A DNA stretch of 64,000 nt, taken from the NCBI RefSeq assembly GCF_963921235.1, contig NC_086098.1, forward strand, positions 154,442,001 to 154,506,000, given 5' to 3'. Under the pieces are notes generated by a model, which was given only the letters and a program-made list of their open reading frames with translations, was not told where the DNA came from and did not search any database. Positions 21,960 through 64,000 of this stretch are shown here, one piece after another. Position 1 is the first letter of the stretch, and each line of letters begins with the position of its first letter. The position numbers and the translations under genes were made by a program. The stretch is from Mobula hypostoma (lineage: Eukaryota).

Positions 21960-22840
21960 GAATGGTGCCACATCAACTTCTCATTCAATGTCAGAAAAAT
22001 CAAGGAACTGATGATTGACTACAGGGGGACGAAACCGGAGGTCTATGAGCCATTCCTCATTAAGGGATCATAAGAGGAGAGGGTCAGCCACTTCAAATTA
22101 CTCTGTATTATAATTTCAGACCAGCAACTAAATTCCTCTCATTTCAGAAGATCTGACTTGTGAATAGCAGGTAGGTGCCATTACAAGGAATGGATGGTAG
22201 TCCCTCTACTTTTTCGGTATGGCAGCTAAAAAATTGACAAAATTCTATAGATATGTGGTGGAGAGTTTATTAACTCTTTGCAGCACTGCCTGGTATGGAA
22301 ACACCAATGCGCTTGAACGGAAAAGCCTATAAAAAGTAGTGGACACAATGCAGTCCATCACAGGTAAAGCCACTGAGTACAACAATAAGGAGTGCTATCG
22401 TAGGAAAGCAGTATCCATTACCAAGCATGCACAACATCCAGGCTATGCTCTCTTCTCGCTACTGCCACCAGGAAGGAGATACAGAAGTCTTGGGTCCCAC
22501 ACCACCAGTTTCAGGCAGAGTTATTACACCTTAACGTTACTGAACCAGAGGGGATAACTTCACTCACTCCAGCACTGAACTGGTTCCACAATCTGTTGAC
22601 CCACTTTCAAGAACTCAAGAACTCATGCTCTCAATATTTTTATTGTTCTTATTTTCTTATTTTTCTTCTGCATTTTCACAAATTGTCTTTGCCACATTGC
22701 TTCTATGTTTTGTTTGAATGCATTTTTCACTGATTCTGTTGTGTTTCTTCATATTTACTGTGAATGCCTGCAAGAAAATGAATTCCAGGGTAAGATATTG
22801 TGACATATATACTTAAATAATCAAATTTACTTTGAATTTT
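21960..22840 (+). mobile_element. Rex/Babar- or L2-like LINE 3' fragment with tail
   Basis: Degenerate ORF (HPGYALFSLLPPGRRYRSLGSHTTSFRQSYY). The tail recurs at 56290-56520. Confidence 0.65.
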
Positions 22841-23173
22841 AACTTCAGTCATAGAAAAATGAATGCACACCTAAGTTGCAAGCCATCACTGGGATGACAT
22901 AAACATTTGCATTTATTTCACTGAGACCAGTGTGACTCTTATTTAAGCCCAGTAAACCTATTCTCTGCCAATATATTGTAAATCCGAAGCCTGATAACTC
23001 GAGAACTATTTTGGGTCAGTGTTTTTGATCAAATCCATCCATGAGAATCAAAGTTTTTTCCCAATGCAGGATCTCGATCCAAAACTTCAATCATCCCATC
23101 ACATCTCATACGTTGCCTGTTCGGACAGTCTTTCAGAAAAGTTTGCTCTGTTCTTCCTCATTTGTTGTTCTGC

Positions 23174-24455
23174 TATAAGACCACAAGCTATAGGAGCAGA
23201 GGTAGTCCATTCGGCTGATCGAGTCTGCTCCAGCATTGAATCATGGGCTGATCCAATTCTTCCAGTCATTGCCATTCCTCTGCCTTCTCCCCATACCCTT
23301 TCATGCCCTGGCTAATCAAGAACCTAGCTATCTCTGCCTTAAATGCACCCAATGACTTGGCCACCACATCCGCTTGTGGCAACAAATTCCACAGATTTAT
23401 CACCCTCTGACCCTAAAATAATTTCTCCGCATCTCTAAATGGACGTCCTGCAATCTTGAAGTGGGGCCCTCTTGTCCTAGACTCCCCTGCTATGGGAAAT
23501 AACTTTGCCATATCTAATCTGTTCAGGCTATTTCACATTCAGAATGTTTCTATGAGATTCCCCACCATTCTCCTGAACTTCAGTGAATACAGACCAAGAG
23601 CTGCCAGGCGTTGCTCATATGGTAACCCTTTCATTCCTGGAATCATTCTCGAGAATCTTCTCTGAACCCTCTCTAATGTCAGTATATCATTTCTAAAATA
23701 AGAAGCCCAAACCTGTGCACAAGTGTGGTCTCATTAGTACCTTATAGAGTCACAACTTCATAGCCCTGGTCTTATAGTCTATATCTCTAGAAATAAATGC
23801 CAATATTGCATTCGCCATCTTCACCACCGACTAAACCTGGAGGTTAACGTTTAGGGTATCGTTCACAAGGAATCCCAAGTCCCTTTGCATCTCTGCATTT
23901 TGAGTTCTCTTTCCATCTAAATAATAGTCTTCCTATTTATTTCTTCCACCAAAGTGCATGACCATACACTTTCTAAAATTGCATTTTATTTGCCACTTCT
24001 TTGCCCATTCCCCTTAGCTATCTAATTCTCTCTGCAGGCTCTTTGTTTGCTTAATACTACCCACTCTTCCACCTATCTTTGTATCATTGGCAAATTTAGT
24101 CACAAATCCAATAATCCCATAGTCCAAATCTTTGACATACATGGTAAAAAGCAGTGGTCCCAACACCGACTCCTGTGGAACTCCACTGGTAACTAGCAGC
24201 CAGACAGAATAGGATCCCTTTATTCCTACTCTCTGCTTTCTGCCGACCAGCCAATGCTCCACCCAGGCTAGTAACCTCCCTGAAATTCCATGGACTCTTA
24301 TCTTGCTAAGCAACCTCATGTGGCACCTTGTCAAAGGCCTTCTGAAAATCCAAGTAGGCCAAATCTACTGCATCTCCTTTGTTTACCCTGGTTTGTAATT
24401 TCCTCAAAAAACTGCAGTAGGTCTGTCAGTCAGTATTTTCCTTTTGGGAATGCCA
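23174..24455 (-). mobile_element. 5'-truncated CR1 LINE present only in unit 1
   Basis: Minus ORF 24014-24334 (GVPQESVLGPLLF, KFANDTK). The CR1 tail begins at ~23174. Confidence 0.85.
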
Positions 24456-26055
24456 TTCTGTATTCACTGTAATCCTTACAGCAATTCTTCGCAATATTGT
24501 TCCTCTCCGCCCAACTACATGCATTCTTTGCGATCTCATTTCTTAATTGTAATCATCGACATCAGCCACTTCTGCTTAGTCAGCCGGTGGGGAGAAGCAG
24601 ATGACGTACAGCATAGTGTTTAATTTCTGCGTGATATCCATGTATAATACATCATTGGATTGAGGTAAATGGTAGTTCCTCGAGTAACTTCATCCGAAAT
24701 GTTCATCATTTTGCTCTTAGCATCTTTGGTGTGTCAGTCCTCTTGGAGAAATGGCCATAAATAGGGAAAATATTTCATATATAAAATCTGAATTTAGTTT
24801 AATTTTGTGATTCTGGCTAATGGAAGATACCACCTCTTCTTTGGGCAGACACAACGGTCGGATTGACTGACCAGGGCCTGTCTTTTATTTGCTTACATTA
24901 ACAGTCTTGTGAAGTTTGCTTTTGGAGTGCGAAGATTATCCAGAGCGTAGATTATTTGGGTTCTTACATATTAGTCTCCGGCTGCAGTTCGATTAAATCT
25001 GTTAGGATACTGAAGACGGTTGGGAGACAAACAACCGCTGGATTGGTGGGTCTGGAGTCCCATCATTAATTTAAAAGCAACTATCATTTGATATTGCGCC
25101 ATCTACATTTGGCCAGTAGCTGGAAATGGTGTTCTCTGCATTTTGCATGCCGGACTATACGGGATGAAATAATAGACACAAGAAATTCTGCAGATGCCGG
25201 AAGTCCAAAGCAACACACACATAATGCTGGAGGAACTCAGCAGGTCAGTCAGCATCTAGGTTTAAATTCAGCTTTGGCAGAGGAGACTTCCATGTTAATA
25301 GCAGTTCCTGCGCAGTGTTCCCAAGCTGAAAAATTAGGGACGGGCAAACCTCCTCGCTGCTTGTGCTACCTATTCCACGGAACTTGTCCTCAAGGACTCC
25401 AAAAGTATCAGATAGCCCCAAGACCGGACGTTTTGTGTATCAGCATAGCGTCTAACAATGGAGCTGGATGAGATGGGTAAAGTAAACACCACTCACAAAA
25501 ATCCTTTCAATCACTCTTGTAACCAAAGCATCGGATAAGGTAAAAATAAAAATCTGTAAGTCACTGAAAAGTTTACTGTTCTAAAAGGCACTGTTTTCAT
25601 AACTTCCCGGCGATGTTCGAAAGAATTACCCAAAGTCGCTCTATGTTTCTACATTTCTTCCTTTCACATACTTAAGTAATCTATTAACCACTGAAATTAA
25701 TCATTATCTCAAACTCTTCAGGCTACCAGTGAGTCAGTACCTTCCAAATGCAGTGAAGGGGCTTATAGCTAATATGCTCTATTTAAACGGGTGAACATAA
25801 AACAGGCCACAAGAAAAGCATCTGTAGGAGCTATGTTCCCTCTAATTTGTCATGAACAGTCTGCGCAAATATCTTGTGCTATGCCATTTTTTGCTAACAA
25901 CATGTGCACAGTGAATTTTAAAGTGGAAGTAAACATGAAGCTAGTCAAAAGATAATAAACTACCAAGTCCCGTTGTTGTTCATTGTCTAAAAGATAGAAA
26001 ACAGCTGTCAGTAAGAACTTTGATCTCCTCTGGGTTTGATCGTTTTCTGTCATGT

Positions 26056-26450
26056 TCATCTGCACTCGCACAAAACATACGTAGCAGACCTGTAGCGAGT
26101 AATGAAGGATTTTCTCGTCGGATTTTCTGGCCTGTAAGTGATCGGCACAACATTGTGGGCCAAAGAGCCTGTAATGTGCTGTAGATTTCTATGCTCTATG
26201 AGCTTGTACACCTCGCCCATATGTGACTTACTTGCTAAATGACACCTTACAGAGTCAAGTTTCCAAATATAACTCCACTTCTTCCCACTTGCAAATTCTC
26301 CAGCAACTTTTGCTCGCGGCAATGGACGCAGGTAACACCAATTTCTGTATTGTACATTAGTATTTCTCGGAGCTGCACATTCCTGGCCTCATGACGTCTC
26401 GGTGTAGCAGTTTCTACTGTTTCCTTCAACCGTTTCGTCTTAAATGAACT
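26056..26450 (-). mobile_element. Degenerate hAT-type transposase N-terminus (ZNF862/TTF zinc-finger-like); paralogous copy at ~57530-57800
   Basis: Merged frames give LMYNTEIGVTCVHCREQKVAGEFASGKKW...KLDSVRCHLASKSH, a C2H2-like CxxC...HxxSxxH pattern. Confidence 0.5.
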
Positions 26451-27549
26451 AGCAGATCTTTTGCGCGTAACGCCCTTTGCTTCTTTGGAATTCGGCTTAG
26501 GGAATTAATAAAGACGTACAAAAAAGTATAAATAAGCCAGTTCGCAAACTTCACCTTGTCTACACCGTCCGCATTAGAAACGAAAATGTGATTGTGTACG
26601 ACCGTGAAATATACCTAACATGCCAGTGAGGCAGAAGGAGACAAGCTTTTGTGCCCAGTTTAAATTCCCTTGTGCGCTCGTAGCAAAAGATGCGTTCTCG
26701 CGCGCAAACCTTACAGGGGATGTTGTGGAGCAGGTTTTCATAATTCACCGCGTAATTTTTGTTTAATCCCAAGCGACCCTCACAGTCTTCGGTCATTAGA
26801 GTACCACAGAATGGAATATTTGAACGTTAGTAAAATAGAAAACTATTTGGCCTTTGAAACCTTCAGGTCTTTTTCCATGTATCGCGATTATGACTGATAC
26901 GTAATTTGAATGTCGTGTTGTCACTCCTAAACAGTAGTCCCGAATCCCAGGAATTATTTGTATCCCTTCTATGGCAAATAGATCCCACCCAATTTCAGGG
27001 CATTGCAATTTTAGAAATATTGCACTCGGTTCCTTCAACCAACTCATTGGAATACATTGCAAATGGGTGTGGCTTAAGCACTGGTTCCTGCAATTAATGA
27101 CTTCCTTCTCTTTAAGTCCTAGTACAGGTATAAGATCCCTGTCAGTCAAGATATTCAAATTTGCCAGTACCTTGCCCCCGTTCCATGTGATTTACTTTTC
27201 GACACTAAACTATGAGGCACAACATTATTACAAACTATTCGCCTGTAATTTCCACCTCCTATCCTAGGCAATCTGCTTACATTTGCGAACGCCAAAGTTT
27301 CTATCACCTGCAAAAGTTTGGGAACGGAGCAACCAGTGAATCCGATCCATCACGTCTACTTACTTCAGTAAACATGGTTGCTTATTATCTGCTGATATTC
27401 GGAGTTTCGTCTGCGTTAATTTACCCAGCACTTCTTTGAACGTTAATCGATGCCTCTCGACAGTCACACCTTTCAATGCAACTCCCCAATTTGTGTTCAT
27501 CGTCATCGTCATTATGTGCCACGTCCTATGACGTGGTCGAACATAAGTC

Positions 27550-27900
27550 TGTGACCATGATTGCTCTTGGCAAATTCTACAGAAGTGGTTTGTCATTGTC
27601 TTCTTCTGGGAAGTATCTTTACAAAACGAGTGACCCCAGCAATTAACAATACTCTTCGGTAGATTAACTGCATGGCGTCGTTGGTCGTATAACCAGGACT
27701 TGTGATATGCTCCTGATGCTCATACGACCATCCCCCACCTGCCCCTATGGTTCACGTGTCCCTGATGGGGGGAGGGGTTAAGCAGATGCTGGTGCGACAT
27801 CTTGCCCAAAGGTGAACTGCAGGCTAGCAGAGCGAAGGAACGCCTTACACCGCCTTTGCTAGAGACGTTCCTCCACGACACCACCCAACCCTGTGATAGC
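27550..27900. repeat. SINE-like insertion shared by both Ig units (second copy ~58875-59220)
   Basis: The same ~350-bp element (GACCATGATTG..., GTGACCCCAGC..., CTTGCCCAAAGGT...) sits at the equivalent position in both units, so it predates the duplication. Confidence 0.6.
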
Positions 27901-28843
27901 GTTGCCATTTCTTATACAATAGCTTCCATCGCTTTCATTTAGACGCCCGGTGTTGATAGTTTCTGAACATTCATTCCATTCTTACAGGCGCAGAAATATC
28001 TGTCTCCCCACCTCTCAGCTCCTCAAGCTTCGTCACACTCGCTCTCTTACCCGTTTACTCGCCCACTGTGGTGTCAACGTTAAGATGGTCGTACTTCCTG
28101 GCTTTAAAGTGGTTCAATTTAATATCAAAAAAATCCACATCCAACCTGAAATTGTTACGCTTCACAGAGTCAACCAGAAGAAAGAAACCCCAAAGAATGA
28201 CTGATAGTGATATTACAACCCCGAACCCTGTCCCCCAACGCAAAAGCAAAAGCGGAAGCATCCACCCAACCCTCCCCTCTCGCCAGTTGCACCAACAGAC
28301 GTACCAACCCCACCCTATAGCCAAAGCCCCCAAAGTGACCTTGATCTACAGTCTCACTGGGTGCATTCTTTCAAGGAACTACTACCCCCAAGATTATCTA
28401 AAAGAGAAAACCTGGCTTAAGTTCTTAAATTGCAGTTGAACGGAAACCTAAGATAATTGCTTTGAACGTTATCCTGTGCCACCCCACTCCGGATAGCACA
28501 CGTGATTTTTTTTTATCTTTACATCTTCAATGTTTGTTTCCATGCAACAATTTATTCGGTTTACAATGTGTCTCTTGGCTGTGCATGAGCCCTTCGCCTG
28601 GAGCAACTGAAACAATTCAGCTACTCCCGTCTGAAGTAATATTTGGTCTCTATCGCTCGCATCTACAAAGAATCTGTTGTTCCTTCCTGCTTTGTCATAC
28701 GGTTTACCCTGACGCTTTGCACTATTTGCCTGGACCGTTTCGCTGTGTTTCTCTCTTGCCTCCCCTGAAGGACTGGATCGGTGTAAATATAAAAATCCTC
28801 TCAGGCCAACTGTTCCGTGTTTTGGTGCAATGTGGGTAGAGTT

Positions 28844-28875
28844 TTGCATGAATAATTAATATGCAGTGACGTAAC
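28844..28875 (+). promoter_or_regulatory. IgL promoter block 1 (inverted octamer-like half sites plus TGACGT CRE-like motif)
   Basis: TTGCATGAATAATTAATATGCAGTGACGTAAC is 31/32 identical to 60137-60168 and lies ~85 bp upstream of the ATG. Confidence 0.75.
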
Positions 28876-28959
28876 AATACTTGGTGTCCCGCTTAAACTT
28901 AAAAGGCGACTTGGAAGGAGCAGAGAACTGAACTTGTGTCGGAAAGCAACACTTTCACC

Positions 28960-29008
28960 ATGTCCGAATGGATTCGGTGTCTTGTCGCACTGGTGGTCTG
29001 CTTCCAAC
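28960..29008 (+). CDS. Ig lambda cluster 1 leader exon
   Basis: CACCATG Kozak context, MSEWIRCLVALVVCFQ plus 1 nt, donor GTAAGT at 29009, 87-nt intron ending CCCCAG at 29095. Confidence 0.9.
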
Positions 29009-29095
29009 GTAAGTACAACGCATAATCTATAATATCGATGCATTTCACTTTGTGTGCATGCATGACAACTCTAAGATTAATTTACATTCCCCCAG

Positions 29096-29437
29096 ATACA
29101 GTCGCAGATTTTGTTTTGACTCAGTCCCCGTCTATCTCAACTTCTGCGGGGAAAACTGTAAAGATCACTTGTACCATGTCAGGAGACAACGTCGGTAGTT
29201 ACTACGCGAGCTGGTACTGGCAGAAACCCGGCAGCGCCCCTGTGTATGTGTGGCATGAAAGCTATGGCAGAGCTTCCGGTATTCCAGAGCGATTTACCGG
29301 TTCCGTAGACTCATCTAGCAGCAAGATGTGCTTAACCATTGACAACGTGCAAGCGGAGGACGACGCCGAATATTACTGCGCTGTAGGTAAAAATTATGTC
29401 ATCACCTTCGGAAAAGGAACCAAACTGAATTTAGGCA
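29096..29437 (+). CDS. IGLV: Germline-joined Ig lambda (type II/NS3-like) VJ exon, cluster 1; open but has no cognate C exon
   Basis: DFVLTQ...ITC...[10 protein letters not shown]...[19 protein letters not shown]. No RSS between V and J. Donor A|GTAAGT at 29438 (phase 1). Confidence 0.92.
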
Positions 29438-29946
29438 GTAAGTGTTTTTTTCCTTCTAATGGTCATTTTATGTTATTTCGGTTTCAAAACGGTGCTTAAG
29501 TTGACTCTTAATTGTTGGGATATTAGCCACTAAAAACATTTCTGAAATCTCTTAGATCGATATAGTGAGTCAGTTTAAAAGGGGAGAAAACATTGTCATT
29601 AAAGGATATTAATTTAGCTTTGCATACATTGACGATTGAGTGTTTTTAAGAACAAGAAATCGAAATGGCGCCTGATATTATTGATGGTGCCGAATCATGA
29701 AGAGGGCATACAAGCCATTTATTACCATGTTACAACAATGTGGCTTCAACTTTGATGGGAAACTGGAAAACACAGGAAAGTAACTTCCAAATGCATTGAT
29801 TTGATTTCCCCAGGGAATGGTGTAAGGCTGAAACAGAGCGACGGAAGTTATTCAGCTGAGAATGGAGAACAAATCTTCCTTCCTCCGCAATATGGACCAA
29901 CGACTTATCCAAATTACATGTAACTTTCCTCATTCCCTGCTGCACA

Positions 29947-30101
29947 AACATTAATTCTTCTTTTTTCAAATCTTTTTATTGTTATATACAGGAAAAATAA
30001 CACGAGTACATCGAAGTAACAACACTGACAATGCCTCAAAAAAAACATTATCTTAAAGATTTGAAAAATAAATTTCAATCTTTTTTAACATTAATTCTTC
30101 T
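29947..30101 (-). mobile_element. Tiny 5'-truncated LINE (probably L1) 3' end with 15-bp TSD in the J-C intron of unit 1
   Basis: AACATTAATTCTTCT at 29947-29961 and 30087-30101. T-run and TTTATT at the left end (poly(A) side on the minus strand). Unit 2 has a single uninterrupted site. Confidence 0.75.
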
Positions 30102-30189
30102 AAACTCTGTTTTCTATTTCCCAGTTCCCTGTCGTTCTTTTCTCCCCTTGTATTTGTTGAATACATTTTCTCCCAGTTAAGAAATTACT

Positions 30190-33100
30190 AACTTGAACTA
30201 CAGGGGGACCAATATCCTTTCAGGGAGGTTTATTAGTGCTATTGGGGAGGCTTTAAACTAGATTTGCAGGGGGATGGGAACCAAAGTACCAGAGCTGACA
30301 GCATGGCTGGGGTGAAAATAAATGTTGTTAAAAGTTCAAGCAAATCCGCTAATAGAAAGGTTGTGAGTGGTGGTAAAAATCTTCTGAGCTGTATATATTT
30401 CAATGCTAGGAGTATTGCGGGGAAGGCGGATGAGTTGAGGGCGTGGATTGACACGTGGAATTATGATGTTGTAGCAATTAGTGAAACTTGGCTACAGGAG
30501 GGGCAGGACTGGCAGCTTAATATTCCAGGGGTCCGATGTTTCAGATATGATCGAGGCAGAGGAATGAAAGATGGGGGAGTAGCATTGCTTGTTAGGGAAA
30601 ATATTACAGCAGTGTTCAGGCAGGACAGATTAGAGGGCTTGTCTACTGAGCCCTTATGGGTGGAGCTGAGGAACAGGAAAGGTACGGCCACATTAGTGGG
30701 TTGTATTACAGACCACCCAATAGTCAACGAGAATTGGAAGAGCAAATCTACAGGGAGATAGCAGGTAACTGTAGGAAACATAAAGTTGTGGTGGTAGGGG
30801 ATTTTAATTTTCCATATATTGATTGGGACTCCCATACTGTTAGGGGTCCAGATGGTTTAGATTTTGTAAAATGTGTTCAGGAAAGTTTTCTAAATCAATA
30901 TATAGAGGGACCAACTAGAGGGGGTGCAATATTGGATCTCCTATTAGGAAACGAGTTAGGACAAGTGATAGAAGTCTGTGTAGGGGAGCACTTTGGTTCC
31001 AGTGATCATAACACCATTAGGTTCAACTTGATCATGGACAAGGATAGATCTGGTCCTAGGGTTGAGGTTCTTAACTGGAAGAAGACCAAATTTGAAGAAA
31101 TCAGAAAGGATCTAAAAAGCGTGGATTGGGACAAGTTGTTCTCTGGCAAGGATGTGATCGGTAGGTGGGAAGCCTTCAAAGGAAAAATCTTGCGAGTGCA
31201 GAATTTGTATGTTCCTGTCAGGATTAAAGGCAAAGTGAATAGGAATAAGGAACACACATCAAAGTTGCTGGTGAACGCAGCAGGACAGGCAGCAGCTCTA
31301 GGAAGAGGTACAGTCGACGTTTCAGGCCGAGACCCTTCGTCAGGAATAAGGAACCTTGGTTCTCAAGGGATATTGCAAATCTGATAAAGAAGAAGAGGGA
31401 GTTGTATGACATGTATAGGAAGCAGGCAGTAAATAAGGTGCTTGAAGAGTATAAGACGTGCAAGAAAATACTTAAGAAAGAAATCAGGAGGGCTAAAAGA
31501 AGACATGAGGTTGCCTTGGCAGTCAAAGTGAAGGATAATCCAACGAGCTTTTACAGGTGAGATTAAGAGCAAAAGGATTGTAAGGAATAAAATTGGTCCT
31601 CTTGAAGATCAGAGTGGTCGGCTATGTGCGGAACCAAATGAAATGGGGGAGATCTTAAATAGGCTTTTTGCGTCTGTATTTACTAAGGAAACTGGCATTA
31701 AGTCTATGGAATTAGGGGAAACAATTAGTGAGATCATGGAAACTGTACAGATCGAAAAGGAGGAGGTCCTTGCTGTCTTGAGGAAAATTAAAGTGGCTAA
31801 ATCCCCGGGACCTGACGACCTGTTCCTCGGACCTTGAAAGAGACTAGCGTTGAAATTGCAGGGGCCCTGGCAGAAATATTTAAAATGTCGCTGTCTACAG
31901 GTGAGGTGCTAGAGGATTGGAGAGTGGCTCATGTTGCTCTGTTGTTTAAAAAAGGATCGAAAAGTAATCCGGGAAATTATAGGCCGGTAAGTTTAATGTG
32001 GGTAGTAGGTAAGTTATTGGAGGGAGTACTGAGAGACAGAATCTACAAGCATTTGGATAGATAGGGACTTATTAGGGAGAGTCAACATGGCTTTGTGCGT
32101 GGTAGGTCATGTTTGACCAATCTCTTGGAGGTTTTCGAGGAGGTTACCAGGAAAGTGGATGAAGGGAAGGCAGTGGATATTGTCTACATGGACTTCAGTA
32201 AGTTTAGCCTTTGACAAGGTCCCGCATGGGAGGTTAGTTAGGAAAATTCAGTCGCTAGGTATACATGGAGAGGTGGTAAATTGAATCAGACATTGGCTCA
32301 ATGGAAGAAGCCAAAGAGTGGTAGTAGAGAATTGCTTCTCCGAGTGGAGGCCTGTGACTAGTGGTGTGCCACAGGGATCGGTGCTGGGTCCATTGTTATT
32401 TGTCATCTATATCAATGATCTGGATGATAATGTGGTAAATTGGATCAGCAAATTTGCTGATGATACAAAGCTTGGAGGTGTAGTAGACAGTGAGAAAGGT
32501 TTTCAGAGCCTGCAGAGGGACTTGGTTCAGCTGGAAAAATGGGCTGAAAAATGGCAGATGGAGTTTAATGCAGACAAGTGTGAGGTATTTCACGTTGGAA
32601 GGTCAAACCAAGGTAGAACATACAGGATTAATGGTAAGGCACTGAGGAGTGCAGTGGAACAGGGGGATCTGGGAATACAGATACAAAATTCCCTAAAAGT
32701 GGCGTCACAGGGTCGTAAAGAGAGCTTTTGGTACATTGGCCTTTATTAATCAAAGTATTGAGTCTAAGAGCTGGAATGTTATGATGAAGTTGTATAAGGC
32801 ATTGGCGAGGCCGAATCTGGAGGATTGTGTTCAGTTTTGGTCACCAAATTACAGGAAGGATATAAATAAGGTTGAAAGAGTGCAGAGAAGGTTTACAAGG
32901 ATGTTGCCCGGACTTGAGAAACTCAGTTACAGAGAAAGGTTGAATAGGTTAGGACTTTATTCCCTGGAGCGTAGAAGAATGAGGGGAGATTTGATAGAGG
33001 TACATAAAATTATGATGGCTATAGATAGAGTGAATGCAAGCAGGCTTTTTCCACTGAGGCAAGGGGAGAAAAAAACCAGAGGACATGGGTTAAGGGTAAG

Positions 33101-33372
33101 GGGGAAAATGTTTAAAGGGAACATTAGCGGGGGCTTCTTCACACAGAGAGTGGTGGGAGTGCGGAACGAGCTGCCAGACGAGGTGGTAAATGTGGGTTCT
33201 TTTTTAACATTTAAGAATAAATTGGACAGATACATGGATGGGAGGTGTATGGAGGGATATGGCCCATGTGCAGGTCAGTGGGACTAGGCAGAGAATGGTT
33301 CGGCACAGCCAAGAAGGGCCAAAAGGCCTGTTTCTGTGCTGTAGTTTCTATGGTTCTATGGTTGTATGGTTT
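30190..33372 (+). mobile_element. CR1 LINE (end of ORF1 plus frameshifted ORF2 EN-RT) occupying the position of the deleted C exon
   Basis: CIYFNARSI, ISETWL, VGDFNFP, SSDHN, GVPQGSVLGP, KFADDTK; (TATGGTT)n-like tail. No TSD: the flanks match sites ~2.7 kb apart in unit 2. Confidence 0.92.
31254..31345 (-). repeat. Short Penelope/retrozyme-like repeat carrying a minimal hammerhead ribozyme core, inserted in the CR1
   Basis: Flanked by AGGAATAAGGAAC at 31241-31253 and 31342-31354. Minus strand reads CTGACGA-AGGGTCTCGGCCT-GAAAC-GTC-GACT. Related pieces occur at ~25190-25260, ~50140-50230 and ~63310-63480. Confidence 0.65.
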
Positions 33373-33373
33373 A

Positions 33374-33445
33374 GACGTTGCCTGTTTGAATTTCGTGGAT
33401 ACATTTTCAGTCACAGCACATAAACTGTGATCGCGTGAATGCTTT
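33374..33445 (+). other. 3' flank of cluster 1, homologous to sequence just downstream of the C exon of cluster 2
   Basis: Ungapped 60/72 match to 63929-64000. Confidence 0.88.
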
Positions 33446-34251
33446 ATCTGTGGTATGCCAGTGTAATTTCATAAGTGGAGAAATGTAATAAAATCTCTTA
33501 TCTCCCATATTGACCTAAACTTTCGTACTAACAATAGTAATATTTTGAATATCTGAGTATTTATAAAGGATGATTACCAGAAATCGATATTTGTGTAGAC
33601 GTGTTAGGGAATTTTGGTAGGGCTGGTGGGTGGCTGTGAGCGTAGAATCAGTGAAAGGATGATTCCCAAAGGAAACCAAGCGCCGTCCATCTGAATCGTC
33701 AGTTCTGCGCTTACTATTAGCGCCATTTCACCATTTAAATGCTTCCAGCCTTTTCTCTCTTTATTCCAGAATTAGGGCGACTGCAGCATTTTCTTAGCTG
33801 TATGTTTCTAGAAAGGGTATTGCGTGAAGTTAATAAGTCATAATAAATCCCACTCACGAAAGTTCCCTGGAAAAGACTGCAAAATACACGCCCAATATGC
33901 CCTCTATTAAAACGTTTCGTTATTTCTGAAAGTCGCCCACATTGACAAACGACCATCTAAAAACTGAAAAATAATCTATTCAAATGGAGAGAAAAGTCAA
34001 TCCTGTGCCACAACAACTCGGATCTCATTACTCACTAAACTGATAAAAGCCGCGGAGTTGCACAATTACCAGTGCCCCAGTAGTAGAGCTGGGTCATGCA
34101 CTTTCGGAATTCCGCGCTCATGCGTACATCCGGAAACACGCCAATAATAACCTGCCATCTCCGCCAGGGAAATAATTGTAAAAGTAACATTGTAGGAATC
34201 ATTTAGCTCCTGCTAGTACCCGGACAACAAGCATCCAATCCATTAACGTTT

Positions 34252-46170: not shown

Positions 46171-48949
46171 GTGCAACAAAATGTGAATGAATTTCTTAGA
46201 AAGTCTCTATAACGTCATCCTAAATATTTCAAAGTATCTTTTGTATTGGCAAGAACTCGAAAGATAATTGTTGACTATATCGTCTCCCCTGATTCACTAC
46301 TAAAATTCCTTTCAAAAAGTGTCATCAGGTATTAAATACTTCCTTTACAATTGCTAGCTCACCACCCAATCTTCCGTACATCTGTTCCAAAATTAAAATA
46401 AAATCGTAGGGGTTGTAAATCTGAAAAGAAAATCAGAAAATGCTGTTAGCTTTCGGCGACAGGCGGGGGGAGCGGATGTTGGGTTATACTGGAGGGCTTT
46501 TGACTTAAAACATAAACACCGCAGTTCGTTCTCCTGTACACATTTGCAGATATCCCATTTGCCGCGATACGATGTGACATGGATAGAATTTGCAGGAATA
46601 ATTGAAACTTAGTGATGTTGCTGTGTTTCAGGGTTATTAAAGGGAGGCCAATAATAGAGATCCGAAATTGTGCACAAAAATATTTCGTTTTTGAACCTTA
46701 ACCATCTCTTTCACGGTGCCTGAATAGGTTCCGTGTCTCGCTTCGTTCATGTTTCGTTTACACTGTAAAGCAAACCATTAAGGCAGTAACTCGTTACACT
46801 GTATCTGAATATTCATTTTATCGTTTCGGTAGCTACAAACGCTGAGACTTTGTTTACTCGGTGTCTTACTTTTAATTCTATTTCTCCGGGGGAAACCGGC
46901 AAGGTGACCTGTCCATATCAGGAGACAGTATAGGATATTATTACCCGAGATGGTATTGCCAAACACATTTGCGTGATATGAAAGCGCCAGTCGTATAGCA
47001 ATCCCCATTGTTTCACTGGTACTGTGGACAAACCGAGCTGCTTTTTGCTTCACTTGACCATCTACCGTCTTTTGTGTCTCCATTTTAAAAAAAATTCAAG
47101 TTGGTACTGGATTCACTTATTAAGATGGCCCTCTCCGGAGACACTTTCACTTGAAAGGAGATAGAAATGTTAAGTCCAGATGTAGCATAGACATGGGTGA
47201 TACATTTTAAAGCACATTAGCGGAGTCAGTGAAAATAAAGAATTCCCAAATACACCAGTGCAACATCGGCCAGCTTGTGTTCTTTACTCACGGGTCTTCA
47301 TTGCACTAAGTTCCATATTCTTGGGAGCATACAAATGTTTGTTGTCATATTATAACACGCATCAAAATCTCGTACTCCCTCTTTCACAACCCGTCCCCGT
47401 TTCGATCCAGCATGGTATACCCTTGCTCATAGATAAATCTTAGAGTGGATTGTAAGGTCGGCACGAATTCGTGGGCCGAAAAGCCTGTACTGTGCTGGAG
47501 TGTTGTATGTTTTGTTTTCTAAACCGATATTCAATTATGTTGGTCCTTCGCCCCACCCAGTTTAAATGCAACCCGTCCTTCTAATCTTGGTCCACCTGTC
47601 CCAGAAAGGAACACAACGATCCTTATACATAAAACCCTCCTTCCCTCATCAGCTCCGTGGACACGCATTTAATTGCACTATATTCCTAATTTGCGCCTTG
47701 GCAGTGCGTGGCACGATGGGTGATTGTAGGATCACCTCCCTTAAGGTCCTTTTTTTTAATACTGGTATGTCCTTTAGCTGAAGGGCGTTAAAGTCCCAAA
47801 GTACGAGGAAGTAAGTTTCTGGACAAAACAGTCGCTGACGCTTCATATACAATATTGCAGTCAATTTGGGACATTGAAGCTCAGGAAAGATGTTATTGGT
47901 TTTAGGGAGGATCCAGAAATTCCCTGGGATGACAGGGAGGCTCTATGGACTCATCCAATAATAACAATTAACATGACGGAATACTATACAGTAGACAGAG
48001 CGGGGGAAATCCTCTGCAAGGATAATAATGAAACATGTTGGAGTTTGCAGTTAAATTATATCGTTCAGATGCGATATTTTGCAGCATTTTTTCTCGTTTA
48101 CAGCAATACGAATCTGTACCTCAATCTACTAAAGCCGGGATACTGAATAAATAGATAATTTCAAAAGTATCATCAATAATTTTGATTCAGAAAAGAGAAA
48201 ACTGCATTACATATTCGTTTCGGTATTTTCAGTTGCCCCAGGGCAGAAATGTTCACTTAAAAGGGAGTAAGGGACTGTTCTTAATTTGCGTTGTAACAAA
48301 CGAGAATTAAATGATAGAAACATGCTCTAATTTCAGTTGGGTGCCTACTTTGCGCGGATAGAAATATCAGTTTTTAACATTGTAATCCTTACTGCACTCA
48401 AAATCTATTCAGAATAGGTAATCTCTCTTTATTCCCCAACCAATGAGTTTTACATATTGGATAAAAGAGTTTAAACGCCTCTAGCATATTTCATTAAGCT
48501 CCCAGAATGTCTGGGAACTAAATCAAAATACCTCAGCAGCTGAAGCAGTTTGCCTTCACATTTTGCGGATGTTGAACTGCTGACAAATGTCCATCCAATC
48601 CTAAAAAGCGATGGCGAAAAAGGGTTTAAAATTTCAAGGTCTTCGAATGACCATGAATATTTCTGACACTTAGACATACTCACAAACGGGATTTTTAAAT
48701 GACCATAATATGCATTTAAATTAAACAACTAAAACTTGTTAACTCGCCTCTAAAAGTTAAAGATAAAAATGTTCAAGATTGCAAAGCTTAACAAAATCCA
48801 CTTCAAAATAAGCCAGTGCCTCGTGTGCCAGGAACGAAAGACCAATTTCTCTAACAGTATTGCTGAAGATGTCATTGACTTTCTGCTTCACTGCTCGTGA
48901 TAACCGCCTGAATTTTACTATTTTACATTTATTGGGAGCTTAGTTTTCC

Positions 48950-59100: not shown

Positions 59101-60136
59101 GGGGGGGCTCAGCATGAGCTATACCCTTGCCCAAAGGTAATCTGTAAAGTAAAGGAGGGAAGAAGTGGCTTACAACTCCTTTGGTAAAGATATACCTTCA
59201 CCCGGCACCCAACTCTGTTAGCGATGTTCCATTTATTATACAATAGATTTAATCCCTTTCATGCAGACACCTGGTATTGATACTTCCTGAACATTCGCTC
59301 CATTCGTAGCAGAAATAACTGTTTCCTCACTCTCAGCTCCTCGTCCTTGATCTTCCTCACTCTTGCTCTCTCACCCGTTTTCTCTCCCACTTTGGTGTCA
59401 CCCTTAAAATGCCCACACGTCCTGGCTTTCAAATGGCTCAAATTAATATCTGAAGATGTATTCACCATACAACCTGAAAGTCTTACGCTTCACAGAGACA
59501 ATCACGGAGCAAGAAACCCGAAAGTATGAATGATGGTGACATCAGATCCCCAAAGTCCCCCCACCTCCTCCACACACAAGCAGCAGCACCGACCACAGCA
59601 CCACCACCCCGAACGCCCTCACCATGCAGTCAATAGTAAATGCCCCAAAGACACCTTTGATCCAAGTCCATCATTTGATGCATTCTTTCAAGGATCTACA
59701 ATTCCCAAGATTATCTAACAGAGAAAACCTGATTTAAGGACTTAAATTGGAATCAAACGGAAATCTAACATAATTGTTTTCAAAGTAATGTTGTCCGCCG
59801 CACCGCAGGTAGTACACGTGAGCTTTTCTTCTTTATAATTTCAATGTTTGTTTTCGCGCAATAATTTATTCGGCTACAATATGTTCATCTGTGTGTCTCT
59901 TGACAGAGCATGAGACAGTCTCCTGGGCAATTATCGCCCTCCAGCTACTCCTGTCTGAAGTAATATTTGGGCTTGTATAGGTCGCATTATATCGAATCTA
60001 TTGTTCCTTCCCGTTTTACCGTGCGGTTTACTCTGATGTTTTCTACTATTTGCTTGTCCCGAAGGGCTGGTACGATGCAAATATAAGATAAATTCAGACC
60101 AACAGTTTCGTGTTTTGGTGTCACGTGAGTAGACGG

Positions 60137-60168
60137 TTGCATGAATAATTAATATGCAATGACGTAAC
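60137..60168 (+). promoter_or_regulatory. IgL promoter block 2
   Basis: TTGCATGAATAATTAATATGCAATGACGTAAC, with TATTTAAA at 60181. Confidence 0.75.
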
Positions 60169-60252
60169 GATACTTAGGACTATTTAAAGGGGGGTTCAGA
60201 TGGAATTAAGAACCGAACTTGTGTCGGAAAACAACACTTCTACTCCTTCACC

Positions 60253-60301
60253 ATGGCCGAATGGATTCGGTGTCTTGTCGTACTGGTGTTCTGTTTTCAA
60301 A
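60253..60301 (+). CDS. Ig lambda cluster 2 leader exon
   Basis: CACCATGG context, MAEWIRCLVVLVFCFQ plus 1 nt, donor GTAAGT at 60302, 91-nt intron. Confidence 0.92.
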
Positions 60302-60392
60302 GTAAGTACAATGCCTAAATAAGCTATAATATCGCTGCATTTTACTTTGTATGGATGTGTGACAACTCTAACACTAATCCATATTTCCCCAG

Positions 60393-60734
60393 ATACAGTC
60401 GCGGATTTTGTTTTGACTCAGTCCCCGTCTATCTCGACTTCTGCGGGGAAAACTGTAAAGATCACTTGTACCATGTCAGGAGGCAACATCGGTAGTTACT
60501 ACGCGAGCTGGTACTGGCAGAAACCCGGCAGCGCCCCTGTGTATGTGTGGGATGAAAGCGATGGCAGAGCTTCCGGTATTCCAGAGCGATTTACCGGTTC
60601 CGTAGACTCATCTAGCAACAAGATGCACTTAACAATCACAAACGTGCAATCGGAAGATGCTGCCGACTATTACTGCGCTGTAGGGAAAAGTGGTGTCCTC
60701 ACCTTCGGAAAAGGAACCAAACTGAATTTGAGCA
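60393..60734 (+). CDS. IGLV: Germline-joined Ig lambda (type II/NS3-like) VJ exon, cluster 2
   Basis: DFVLTQ...WYWQKP...[19 protein letters not shown], 342 nt like cluster 1. Acceptor CCCCAG, donor GTAAGT at 60735. Confidence 0.95.
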
Positions 60735-63552
60735 GTAAGTGTTTTTTTCCTTCTTCGGTCATTTTATGTTAATAAGTCCAATAAGAACAATAAGTCCAAA
60801 TGGCGCCTGATATTATTGATGGTGTCGAATCATGAAGAGGAGATACACGCCATTTATTTCCATGTTACCACAACGCGTCTTCAACTTCGACAGCAAGTTG
60901 GAAAAGGCAGGAAGGTAAGTCCCAAAGGCGTTGATCCGATTTCCCCACCGAATGGTGTGAGGCTGAAAGAGAGCTACTGAAGTTATTGAGCTGAGAATGG
61001 AAAACACTTCTTTCTTCCTCCGCAATCTCGACTCGCGACTTTTCAAATTTACTTGTAACCTTACCCCATTCTGTGCTGTGGGAACCTGAATTCTTCTAAA
61101 CCCTGTTTTCCATTTCCCAACTCCCTCTCGTCCTGTTCCTCTCCTGTGTTTATTGACTTATAATTTCTCCCAGTTAAAGAATTACGTACGAAAAAAATGT
61201 CACCCTTGTTATGATATGATCCTTAGGCTTGGACCAATTTCATTTCTGTAGTATTCAACCTTATAACCAGTTGCGATCTAATTTTCGCCACTTAATCATG
61301 TTAGCAGCGCTTTCATGTGTAGATGCTCCAAGCTCTGAAATGCCATCCCTAAAACACTCTATGTCGTTATCGTTCTTTGTTCTTTTTTAAAAACTTTTAA
61401 AACGTATGACTTTGTCCAAATTTTGCTCCTCTAGTTTTCAGTGTTTATGGGCTCAAATTTGGTCTTGTTGTGTTACTATGACATGTTTTGTTGTCGTTGA
61501 AAGCACTACATAAAGGATTTTTGTATTATTTGTGAGACGATTAGGGACACTAAGGTTCCTTTTTGACCGATGTTATCAGACAATCAGTAAGTCCCATCTG
61601 AAACGGAAGTTCAAACAGTACAAACGGGTAATTAACAATAGACAAAGTCAGAGAGTGCAGGTTTCAAGAAAACGTTGACACCAGATCGACTCCCTTCTGA
61701 ACTGTTAAATCTTAAGACCTCCGAGACTCAGGTTGTCTTTGACTGTTTTCCAGACTGTCTGATCTGCACAATCTGAAACCCCAACAGGAAACGCTTATAT
61801 TTTACCATTTATTCTCCATGTGATTGTACAACATTAAATTCTTCTTGGACAGTGCTGCAAATTGCTTCAGCTCATGTCCGAAATCACACTAAAAGCCTTA
61901 ATGCCACTGTCACGTAACTTCCCTTTGGTAGACGCAGATCTGAATATGAGGTTTTTTTTTCGAAATACCTTCTCAGAGTTTCTGTTTATTGACTTTTGCC
62001 ATTTCTTCTGTGATTTGTGTCACCAAAAGTGTAATATCGATGAACGTGCCTATAATCTCTCAGGATATTAAATCCTATTCCGATTTAAATACTCGCCGTC
62101 AGTCTTCTCTGTGATATGTGGGTTCGGAGATTCAGGTGTGTTGCTGAAGGGTAGAGGAAGGAAGAGATTAGGACGAGATCGCTTCAGCAACTTTACCTAG
62201 TACATTCCCTTAACATAGTTGTGAGCTTGCATGAAGACAAAATGTAAACCTGCATTGATGGCGCACTTTCCCAAAGCTCGTGAGTGCATTCAGCACCGCA
62301 ATCGGGGGTGAGTTACAGACAATTGTCCCGGAGTTAGCAATGTGAAAACGAGATGATTATTTGTTTCGTCTACTTTTTATGATGGACAATTATAGGAGAG
62401 AAAACTCCAGGTGTAAAAACAGATTATTTCTTGGAACTTAAATGTAGCATTGTCTAATTTGTTTAGAAGAAAATTTAGTTTTAAGAAAACTTTAGTTTTA
62501 AGAAAACAATTGCTTTTATTCAGGTAGCGCCTGACATTCCGACTCTGGTTCCGTCCCCAGAAGCAGATCCCGAATGTGACGGGATTGCTGGATTTTTTGG
62601 GAGGGGGGAGTGGAACTTGCTTGCCTCATTGGCGCGTGGGAATTAGTAAAATCTACCAGTTAAATAGTTCAAATAATCGAAATAGTTCGGTCAGTGATTG
62701 TCCCGGTTTGATATTTGCAACTGTCAGCAACATTAGCGCCTAATGGGAGGCAAAAGCAAATTAATGATCGATTTAGCAACTTGAATTGACCCGAATTTTT
62801 TGAGTTAAATATTACAATATACAGTCTTTCCATTCGGCACGCTTAGGCGTTTATTCAAAGTTCATATCTATTATTTGTTTCGACATGCATGTCGAAATGT
62901 GAATGCGACAAAGAAGATACAATCTTAATACCCACAGTAAGTTCCTTATTCATTTCCATTGCTCGCTGACCTTCCCCCATCAATATTTATTCCGAATTCC
63001 ATTCGAAACTTGTATAAGGTAAAGAAAATGCATAAAATTGGAAACTCTACGGCCTCTTTGATTGACGGCGCGGTTAATTTTGAAATTCAAAGCATCTGAT
63101 TAGTCAACATTGTTTTCTTTGAGAAAGAAAGATTTGTTTTTGCTTTTTGTCTTGGTTATATTCTTTAAATACCCCCAGGCTATTGCATTTACAGTCACCT
63201 CGGCTTCTATCGCTATTCACGTTCAATAAATCGGGTTCCATTGGATAACAGTTTTCATACTGATACAGCGATGTCGGTCGTGTAATCAATAAAGAAAAAC
63301 TTTTTAGTAAAATTAAAGCTACTGGAGGAACTCAGCCTGTCAGGCAGCATGTGTCGAGGCAAATGGGTCCTAATGCACGACTGTCTCTTTGCTTCTACAG
63401 ATGCTGCCCGACCCGATGAATTCAGTCGGTTGGCAGTTCTTTTGCTTCAGATCACAGCATGTGCAATCTCTCGTAGATCCGAGGAAAGGCATTAATTTCA
63501 GATTACTCAATCAGTAATTGATTGGCAGCTATACATGTTTTTTTTATTTCAG

Positions 63553-63875
63553 ATCCACAACCCCCCGTGGTGTCCGTCCTCGGACCTTCGACAGAAGAAC
63601 TCAGGGGAAAGGGCACCGCCACCCTGGTGTGTTTGGTGAGTGGGTTTAATCCGGGCGCTGTGAATATCGAGTGGACTATGGATGGTAATACCAGAAAGAA
63701 TGGCGTTGAGACCAGCCGGATCCAGCAGGACACGGACAACACGTTCAGTGCGAGTAGTTACCTGACTCTGCCCGCCTCAGACTGGAACTCACACGAGCTT
63801 TTCTCCTGCGTGGTTAAACACGAGACTCAAGCAGCCCCACTTAAAGCAAACGTCATGAGATCCAGCTGTATCTAA
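63553..63875 (+). CDS. IGLC: Ig lambda constant exon, cluster 2
   Basis: Acceptor TTTTTATTTCAG. PQPPVVSVLGPS...ATLVCLVSGF...EW...SSYLTL...FSCVVKHE...RSSCI*. L+VJ+C totals 714 nt, or 237 aa in frame. Confidence 0.95.
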
Positions 63876-63911
63876 TTCAAGCAATCTATGTACCGATTCA
63901 TTACATTTGAA

Positions 63912-63917
63912 AATAAG
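63912..63917 (+). terminator. Candidate variant poly(A) signal AATAAG
   Basis: It is the only AATAA-like hexamer between the C stop codon and the window end, and is followed by GT/T-rich sequence. Confidence 0.35.
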
Positions 63918-64000
63918 TGTCTCGTTTCGACGTTGCCTCTTTGATTTTGTTGGATACATTTTCGGTCATAGCAGATGAACAGTGATTGCTTGAATGCATT

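What the first reader, a model, noticed from the sequence alone, without database searches (positions are those of the whole stretch)
30188..33374. CR1 LINE insertion replaced the constant exon of cluster 1 (~2.7 kb target-site deletion)
Similarity to unit 2 stops at 30188 (matching ~61185 in the J-C intron). It resumes at 33374 with a 60/72 ungapped match to 63929-64000, which is downstream of C. The CR1 abuts both breakpoints and has no TSD. Unit 2 has no CR1 at either point, which favours retrotransposition-mediated deletion over recombination between two old copies. This is a direct record of how a cartilaginous-fish Ig cluster becomes C-less.
Basis: seen in the sequence. Interest (0 to 1): 0.7.

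Follow-up and report, generated by a model that had tools for sequence, protein, structure and literature searches.

The report
Jumping gene replaced antibody constant exon
In a devil-ray genome, one of two neighbouring antibody light-chain genes has lost the coding part of its constant exon, and an old CR1 jumping-gene copy fills the gap exactly; this is a clean but ordinary example of a known way that jumping genes delete DNA, and this window cannot show whether insertion and deletion were one event.

Summary
The window holds two tandem germline-joined lambda (type II) light-chain clusters. Unit 1 (22580-30188) matches unit 2 (56290-61185). The match resumes at 33363/33374 against 63918/63929 (60/72 ungapped; next best in the window 35/72).

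- **Unit 2** has 2.73 kb between the breakpoints, including the window's only C exon (63553-63875).
- **Unit 1** has a 3.2 kb, 5'-truncated, decayed CR1-like LINE there: endonuclease, reverse transcriptase, 3' hairpin and octamer microsatellite.
- **Right breakpoint.** It lies 42 nt after the C stop codon, so it is probably inside the 3'UTR. Unit 1 keeps a probable UTR relic with an AATAAA.
- **Age.** The 3' junction also occurs in a contig from a second organism that is 2.6% diverged, so the event is old and probably fixed.

My odds:

| Reading | Odds |
|---|---|
| One-step insertion-mediated deletion (most economical) | ~0.5 |
| Ordinary insertion into the UTR, then a deletion running into the CR1 5' part (same structure) | ~0.3 |
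| Recombination between two CR1 copies | ~0.06 |
| Assembly artefact | ~0.03 |

The 5' junction was not verified by reads.

RefSeq model XP_062929427.1 (Mobula hypostoma) splices unit 1's leader and VJ onto unit 2's C exon. "C-less" therefore need not mean dead; this is untested. The scan had noted that in-frame splice option on this window before (s1-142471).

The parts
28960..29008 (+). Unit 1 leader exon (ATG at 28960; donor C|GTAAGT)
   Evidence: Sequence. It matches residues 1-16 of XP_062929427.1 (P0001).
29096..29437 (+). Unit 1 germline-joined VJ exon, open reading frame intact, donor A|GTAAGT intact
   Evidence: V-set Pfam hit. Coordinates and translation; donor. The sequence is identical to the VJ part of P0001.
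29438..30188 (+). Retained 5' part of unit 1's J-C intron. It corresponds to 60735-61185 of unit 2, plus insertions specific to unit 1.
   Evidence: blastn, MAFFT identity profile and junction alignment.
29962..30086 (.). 125-bp interspersed repeat inserted in unit 1 only, flanked by a 15-bp TSD (AACATTAATTCTTCT at 29947-29961 and 30087-30101)
   Evidence: Appears as a gap in the unit 2 alignment. TSD read. Depth is about 1e4 in all runs (bins 29883-30204).
30189..33373 (+). CR1-like LINE copy. It is 5'-truncated 63 nt before the ORF1 stop and holds a complete but broken ORF2 (endonuclease about 30396-31018, reverse transcriptase about 31816-32700).
   Evidence: Pfam Exo_endo_phos, Exo_endo_phos_2 and RVT_1. 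Collinear pieces switch frame and carry stops. Summed depth is 1e5-1e6 in four organisms. Other copies run on 5' of 30191 (loose end in X9). The U_UUA_AAC heptamer plus UAG sits at 30252.
31254..31341 (.). Nested 88-bp short repeat inside the CR1, with a 13-bp TSD (AGGAATAAGGAAC at 31241-31253 and 31342-31354)
   Evidence: Joints that skip 101 bp appear in all four runs, and this bin has the highest depth. TSD read.
33301..33372 (+). CR1 3' end: hairpin (33301-33341) followed by octamer microsatellite TTTCTATG GTTCTATG GTTGTATG GTTT (33345-33372)
   Evidence: Fold and octamer positions. Compare the 8-bp CR1 microsatellite ATTCTRTG and hairpin described in PMC8665684.
33363..33374 (+). 3' junction zone. 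The bases fit both the CR1 tail and the target (TGTATGGTTT here, TGTCTCGTTT in unit 2), so up to about 10 nt of possible microhomology.
   Evidence: Alignment and blastn block start. The contigs bridging the junction start at 33342 (X1) and 33340 (X5).
33375..33500 (+). Probable relic of unit 1's own C-exon 3'UTR, with AATAAA at 33487-33492
   Evidence: It is homologous to 63930-64000, which begins 42-54 nt after the C2 stop codon. In a third cluster the same stretch is read through as a 23-aa tail (P0004).
60253..60734 (+). Unit 2 leader exon (60253-60301) and germline-joined VJ exon (60393-60734), both intact
61186..63917 (+). Segment of unit 2 with no counterpart in unit 1: 2367 bp of J-C intron, the C coding sequence and 42 nt after its stop codon
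   Evidence: blastn and alignments.
63553..63875 (+). The only C exon coding sequence in the window (acceptor TTTCAG|AT; stop TAA at 63873-63875)
   Evidence: C1-set Pfam hit. Confirmed by tblastn, profile HMM and the sequence itself.

Best explanation
Unit 1 was once a complete leader-VJ-C lambda light-chain cluster like unit 2. A CR1-like LINE RNA was reverse-transcribed from a nick in the bottom strand, probably inside the 3'UTR of its C exon, 42 nt after the stop codon. There the target resembled the element's octamer tail. The new copy's 5' end was not joined a few bases away, which would have made a target-site duplication. It was joined about 2.7 kb upstream in the J-C intron, so the intron's 3' part, the C coding sequence and the first 42 nt after its stop codon were lost in the same event (LINE insertion-mediated deletion).

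Shown:
- the replacement itself;
- the LINE's identity and its intact 3' end at the junction;
- the 5' truncation;
- the lack of a TSD;
- the considerable age of the event.

Inferred: that insertion and deletion were one event.
For: - **Both flanks belong to one cluster.** They are collinear with unit 2, and the flank matches are far above chance.
- **The right flank is a probable 3'UTR relic.** It carries a poly(A) signal, so a C exon was once here.
- **The LINE's 3' end is complete at the junction.** Hairpin plus about 3.5 octamers are present, with 8 of 10 bases shared with the target. This is what target-primed reverse transcription at this very site predicts (PMC8665684).
- **The 5' end is a truncation.** Other copies continue beyond 30191, and at most 4 nt of microhomology is possible there.
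- **No TSD**.
- **Unit 2 has no CR1 at either breakpoint**, so one event suffices.
- **The mechanism is established for other LINEs.** L1, Alu and SVA cause target-site deletions from a few bp to 1 Mb (PMC4859970; PMC3362811).
- **The 3' junction is real.** It is bridged by a 0-mismatch contig of X1 and by a contig from a second organism (X5, 17 differences in 654 bp).
Against: - The structure does not distinguish one event from two. A later deletion ending inside the CR1 mimics 5' truncation.
- The comparison is with a paralogue 20-25% diverged, not with an empty orthologous site.
- CR1 insertions do not always carry TSDs, so the missing TSD is weak evidence (PMC4316615).
- Kilobase-scale insertion-mediated deletions are a small minority of LINE insertions in primates (my own recollection of Han et al. 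2005; that paper is not held).
- The 5' junction was not confirmed by independent reads (none listed).
- I found no report that CR1 elements cause such deletions.
Confidence: 0.5

Rival explanations
1. Two steps. A CR1 copy, 3.2 kb or longer, first inserted normally 42 nt after unit 1's C stop codon. Later an unrelated deletion removed everything from the J-C intron (at the 61185 equivalent) through the C coding sequence and the 5' TSD copy into the CR1's 5' part.
For: - It gives exactly the observed structure: an intact CR1 3' junction, an apparent 5' truncation and no TSD.
- A sense-strand 3 kb insertion between the stop codon and the poly(A) signal may already have crippled the gene, which would relax selection against the later deletion.
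- The event is old, so there was time. The copy differs from the bulk of its family at about 155 positions, roughly 5%, in run X1.
- My rough estimate from primate indel rates (own knowledge) puts the chance of such a deletion in the same range as that of a kilobase insertion-mediated deletion.
Against: - It needs two events where one suffices.
- In the 7.6 kb of aligned unit 1 and unit 2 sequence, the large indels I examined are insertions; no other kilobase deletion stood out.
Confidence: 0.3
2. Recombination between two same-orientation CR1 copies, one in the J-C intron and one just after the C stop codon, deleted what lay between them and left one chimeric copy.
For: - It would also leave a collinear CR1 without a TSD.
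- LINE and SINE recombination-mediated deletions are well documented (PMC4859970).
Against: - It needs two independent long insertions of the same family, in the same orientation, within 2.7 kb, both after the duplication, plus a recombination.
- Unit 2 has neither copy.
- Long LINE pieces are sparse here, about three in 64 kb.
Confidence: 0.06
3. Assembly artefact. Two real CR1 copies were collapsed, dropping a C exon that exists in the animal.
For: - The 5' junction was not bridged by any listed contig, and the junction word search listed no run.
- The element is extremely repetitive.
Against: - The 3' junction is bridged in the probable source run and in a second organism.
- Both flanks have equal single-copy depth, 15-27 in X1.
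- The copy is decayed and carries private changes and a nested insertion, which long reads resolve easily.
- The chromosome-scale public assembly that encodes P0001 has a gene span of 34,916 bp, exactly the distance between the same points in this window. This may be the same assembly as the window, so it is not independent.
Confidence: 0.03
4. Endonuclease-independent capture. A CR1 cDNA was used to patch a pre-existing double-strand break or gap that had already removed the 2.7 kb.
For: - No TSD, and target DNA is lost.
- The pathway is known for L1 (PMC1920257, listed; I read only its abstract).
Against: By my recollection, such L1 insertions are typically 3'-truncated and lack the tail. 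Here the hairpin and octamer tail are complete and pair with the target.
Confidence: 0.05

Closest known systems
L1 insertion-mediated deletions (cell-culture target-site deletions; L1IMD in human and chimpanzee; Alu and SVA equivalents)
   Same: A 5'-truncated LINE with an intact 3' end takes the place of kilobases of target DNA and has no TSD. Reported sizes range from a few bp to 1 Mb (PMC4859970; PMC3362811).
   Different: - The element is a CR1-like LINE that primes on an octamer tail, not a poly(A) tail.
- The pre-insertion state is inferred from a paralogous cluster rather than an orthologous empty site.
- What was lost is an Ig constant-region coding exon.
Amniote CR1 LINEs
   Same: APE-type endonuclease plus reverse transcriptase, severe 5' truncation, and a 3' hairpin followed by an 8-bp microsatellite. 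The repeat here is GTTCTATG against ATTCTRTG, 7 of 8 (PMC8665684; PMC4316615).
   Different: This is a batoid family. Other agents of this scan describe a U_UUA_AAC heptamer at its ORF1/ORF2 junction, and that heptamer is present here at 30252. Placement in an RT tree was not tested.
Germline-joined type II (lambda) light-chain clusters of skates and sharks
   Same: Leader, pre-joined VJ and C lie in a cluster of a few kb. The best named hits are lambda chains of rays, sawfish and sandbar shark. Germline joining of light-chain genes in the skate is described in PMC2192082.
   Different: Unit 1 lacks its own C coding sequence. The next C is 34 kb downstream, behind another intact VJ.
LINE/SINE recombination-mediated deletions (NAHR)
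   Same: A single repeat copy is left at the site of a deletion.
   Different: NAHR needs two pre-existing copies. Unit 2 gives no trace of either.

Membership tests
CR1-clade LINE | ORF2 with an APE-type endonuclease followed by a reverse transcriptase | tested here: met
   Exo_endo_phos E 3.5e-10, Exo_endo_phos_2 E 2.9e-11 and RVT_1 E 3.1e-15, on collinear pieces.
CR1-clade LINE | 3' end made of a hairpin followed by an 8-bp microsatellite, with no poly(A) tail | tested here: met
   Hairpin at 33301-33341 in the minimum-free-energy fold. About 3.5 octamers at 33345-33372, matching ATTCTRTG at 7 of 8 (PMC8665684).
CR1-clade LINE | Reverse transcriptase groups with the CR1 clade in a phylogeny | not tested
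   No curated LINE library or named CR1 reverse transcriptases were available. The FNADKC..H.G motif recalls CR1, but that is from memory only.
LINE insertion-mediated deletion | The LINE abuts both breakpoints, and the ancestral sequence between them is absent | tested here: met
   measured against the paralogous unit 2.
LINE insertion-mediated deletion | Intact LINE 3' end at a plausible priming site, and no target-site duplication | tested here: met
LINE insertion-mediated deletion | An orthologous pre-insertion allele shows the undeleted, LINE-free state, with no intermediate | not testable with these tools
Cartilaginous-fish lambda (type II) light-chain cluster | V-set exon with J already joined, a C1-set exon, and closest named relatives that are elasmobranch lambda chains | tested here: met
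   Met for unit 2. Unit 1 meets the V/J part only.
Cartilaginous-fish lambda (type II) light-chain cluster | Own C exon within a few kb of the VJ exon | tested here: not met
   Applies to unit 1. There is no C-like sequence between 29438 and 63500.

The most novel reading that the evidence does not exclude
Losing C did not kill unit 1. Its intact leader and VJ exons, with intact donor, are transcribed and spliced across 34 kb, skipping VJ2, onto unit 2's C exon, exactly as RefSeq model XP_062929427.1 is drawn. A transposon-linked deletion would then have turned two autonomous clusters into a (VJ)2-C gene with alternative pre-joined variable exons. That would be a small step from cluster organisation towards translocon-like organisation. 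The near-identity of VJ1 and VJ2 over codons 1-75 (pS 0.038, against about 22% divergence in the flanks) would fit continued use, or gene conversion between the two exons.
Probability: 0.2. Interest if true: 0.7.

Novelty: new member of a known kind. Interest (0 to 1): 0.33.

Why it matters
Cartilaginous fishes carry tens to hundreds of small Ig clusters, many of them incomplete. How clusters die or are remodelled is rarely seen at base-pair resolution. Here both breakpoints, the probable 3'UTR relic and the inserted element are all legible, so a specific route of C loss can be named and tested in related rays.

If the one-step reading holds, large target-site deletions, best documented for mammalian L1, would extend to a CR1-like element that primes on a microsatellite tail.

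The more consequential question is whether the orphan VJ now uses the neighbour's C exon. Spleen RNA would answer it directly.

Tried and rejected
- **5' junction in reads.** A second run search with the 61-base junction (30160-30220) sampled only 2 words and listed no run. This is uninformative, not evidence against the junction. Read laying listed no contig across 30188, because a repeat at 29962-30086 and the CR1 leave only about 100 unique bases.
- **Orthologous or own-genome DNA.** The look-up of encoding contigs for P0001 (Mobula hypostoma) and P0002 (Hypanus sabinus) returned gene spans but no DNA, because the files are too large.
- **Rfam.** A scan of 29400-34200 at E up to 1 found only a chance hit. 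The hammerhead-like motif in the nested 88-bp repeat is not recognised, and its fold is no better than shuffles.
- **Han et al. 2005** (PMC1179734) is not held. L1IMD frequencies are therefore from memory and marked as such.
- **TSD search.** There is none at the ends. The 10-mer ATACATTTTC on both sides lies 25-27 bp away and is imperfect on the left side in unit 2, so I treat it as chance.
- **Possible extra homology.** GACCAATATCCTTTCAG (30207-30223) resembles GACCAATTTCATTTCTG in unit 2. I rejected it as flank, because read depth shows these bases belong to the repeat.
- **Literature.** A search for C-less or orphan clusters made by retrotransposons in cartilaginous fish found nothing relevant.
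- **CR1-CR1 recombination and misassembly** were considered and ranked low; see the rival explanations.
Full report
**What is in the window**

The window holds two tandem immunoglobulin light-chain clusters on the + strand.

- **Unit 1:** leader exon 28960-29008 and a germline-joined VJ exon 29096-29437.
- **Unit 2:** leader 60253-60301, VJ exon 60393-60734 and a C exon whose coding part is 63553-63875.

All four V-side exons are open, and their splice sites are intact.

A protein search with the unit 1 VJ frame returns only cartilaginous-fish lambda (type II) chains. The best hit is from Mobula hypostoma, followed by Hypanus sabinus, sawfish and sandbar shark lambda. Germline joining of light-chain genes is an old observation in skates (PMC2192082).

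**Check of the observation**

blastn gives collinear blocks from 22580/56290 to 30188/61185 at 70-82% identity. One further block, 33363-33445 against 63918-64000, stops only because the window ends.

The next best placement in the window is 35/72.

Between the breakpoints, unit 1 has 3.2 kb of + strand LINE and unit 2 has 2732 bp that include the C exon. The LINE has no counterpart anywhere in unit 2.

No other C exon lies in the window. tblastn with C2, tblastn with 58 lambda chains and a profile HMM of their C domains against every six-frame piece all find only 63522-63872.

**The element**

- **Coding content.** Collinear pieces in shifting frames, with several stops, carry an APE-type endonuclease and a reverse transcriptase.
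- **5' end.** The copy starts 63 nt before an ORF1 stop. It includes the U_UUA_AAC heptamer (30252) that other agents of this scan described for this genome's CR1 family. Contigs of other copies continue 5' of 30191, so this copy is 5'-truncated.
- **3' end.** It ends in a hairpin (33301-33341) and about 3.5 octamers, TTTCTATG GTTCTATG GTTGTATG GTTT (33345-33372). This is the CR1 hallmark; the usual amniote repeat is ATTCTRTG (PMC8665684).
- **Abundance and age.** The family is enormously abundant in all four organisms laid. In run X1 this copy differs from the bulk of them at about 155 positions, roughly 5%.
- **Nested insertion.** It carries an 88-bp repeat with a 13-bp TSD.

It is an old, dead copy.

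**The breakpoints**

*Left breakpoint.* Homology to unit 2 ends at 30188-30192. At most 4 nt (TTAC) could be shared with the canonical CR1 sequence, and that rests on only three contigs.

*Right breakpoint.* The last 10 bases of the CR1 tail (TGTATGGTTT) match the unit 2 target (TGTCTCGTTT) at 8 of 10 positions. The junction therefore lies somewhere in 33363-33374 and may reflect pairing of the octamer tail with the nicked target.

This point is only 42 nt after the C2 stop codon. In a third cluster of the same genome, a stop-loss reads this same stretch as a 23-aa tail (P0004). Unit 1 has an AATAAA 113 nt further on (33487).

Unit 1 therefore appears to retain the distal 3'UTR and poly(A) signal of a C exon whose coding part is gone. 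I take this as the strongest sign that a C exon was deleted rather than never present.

No TSD flanks the element.

**Reality and age of the junctions**

A 161-bp contig of run X1 with no mismatch covers 33342-33502. X1 is probably the source animal, so this is not independent.

A 654-bp contig of run X5, from another organism label, covers 33340-33993 with 17 differences and no gap. The 14 differences that the output lists individually all lie at 33402 or beyond. The other 3 are not shown, so the tail and junction are identical or nearly so in that organism.

The insertion therefore predates that split and is probably fixed. A PCR hunt for an allele that still has C is unlikely to succeed.

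The 5' junction could not be checked. It sits between two repeats, and the word search listed no run.

**Mechanism**

*One-step reading (about 0.5).* This is target-primed reverse transcription at the site just after the C stop codon, with the 5' end joined 2.7 kb upstream. It explains everything with one event and has ample precedent for L1, Alu and SVA (PMC4859970; PMC3362811).

*Two-step reading (about 0.3).* The final structure is equally well produced by an ordinary insertion at that site followed by a deletion reaching from the intron into the CR1's 5' part. A truncated LINE has no diagnostic 5' end, and the 5' TSD copy would have gone with the deletion. CR1 TSDs are in any case not always present (PMC4316615). 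My rough rate estimates, from memory of primate data, put the two routes within a few-fold of each other.

*Other readings.*
- Recombination between two CR1 copies needs three events and two insertions that unit 2 does not show (about 0.06).
- Break-repair capture is a variant of the coupled reading (about 0.05).
- Misassembly is about 0.03.

*Size of the deletion.* The figure of about 2.7 kb is measured on a paralogue. The Hypanus protein closest to VJ1 comes from a 4.8 kb gene, against 3.6 kb for unit 2. The true loss may have been up to about 1 kb larger.

**An unexpected point**

The top protein hit, XP_062929427.1 of Mobula hypostoma, is exactly unit 1's leader and VJ followed by unit 2's C. 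Its gene span of 34,916 bp equals 28960-63875 in this window.

The public annotation thus lets the orphan VJ use the neighbour's C across a 34-kb intron that contains VJ2. No VJ2-C2 product appears in the protein collection.

A homology-built model could produce this without any RNA support, and I could not test it because the read tools were exhausted.

- **In favour of continued use or exchange.** VJ1 and VJ2 differ at only 7 of 225 positions over codons 1-75 (pS 0.038). Over codons 76-113 pS is 0.31, and flanking divergence is about 22%. That is less than would be expected if both had drifted apart since a CR1 insertion about 5% ago. It points to later gene conversion or to selection.
- **Against.** One octamer motif, ATGCAAAT in unit 2 (60075), reads GTGTAAAT in unit 1. 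The relic poly(A) signal also lies in the path of any long transcript.

I put the shared-C reading at about 0.2.

**Verdict**

This is a clean new example of a known kind of event, of modest interest in itself. Comparative loci can test the mechanism, and spleen RNA can test the shared-C question.

Noticed in passing
28960-63875: RefSeq model XP_062929427.1 (Mobula hypostoma, 237 aa, gene span 34,916 bp) equals leader 1 plus VJ1 spliced to the C exon of unit 2, skipping the intact VJ2. No VJ2-C2 product is in the protein collection.
   Followed up: partly
29096-29437 vs 60393-60734: There is a sharp identity step inside the VJ exons. Codons 1-75 differ at 7 of 225 nt (pS 0.038). Codons 76-113 have pS 0.31 and pN 0.14. 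Introns and flanks are about 75-80% identical. This fits a gene-conversion tract covering roughly 28935-29322 (compare s1-144233).
   Followed up: partly
31254-31341: An 88-bp short repeat with a 13-bp TSD is nested in the CR1 and is the most abundant piece of the stretch in all four runs. Its minus strand reads CTGACGA...GAAACGTC, a hammerhead-like core (compare s1-143064). Rfam and a single-strand fold give no support.
   Followed up: partly
29947-30101: A 125-bp interspersed repeat with a perfect 15-bp TSD (AACATTAATTCTTCT) is inserted in unit 1's J-C intron about 100 bp upstream of the CR1. It is absent from unit 2.
   Followed up: partly
46832-47062 (+): A degenerate V-domain relic with stop codons (…SPGETGKVTC…FTGTVDK…LHLTI…) lies between the two units. 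It may be the remains of a third, fully decayed cluster. No C relic is nearby.
   Followed up: partly
28842-28880 vs 60120-60160: A nearly invariant promoter-proximal block (TTGCATGAATAATTAATATGCA[G/A]TGACGTAAC, with a CRE-like TGACGTAA) sits about 85-120 bp upstream of both ATGs. An upstream ATGCAAAT octamer in unit 2 (60075) reads GTGTAAAT in unit 1.
   Followed up: no
63873-63941: The 3'UTR directly after the C2 stop codon is read through as a 23-aa tail (QFKQSMYRFITFENKCLVSTLPL) in a third cluster's product (P0004, 260 aa). This matches the earlier stop-loss note s1-143980.
   Followed up: partly
23151-25409: A 2.2 kb stretch is present in unit 1 but absent from unit 2 (56826-56832). It contains a minus-strand LINE reverse-transcriptase fragment (24069-24379) of a different family.
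   Followed up: no
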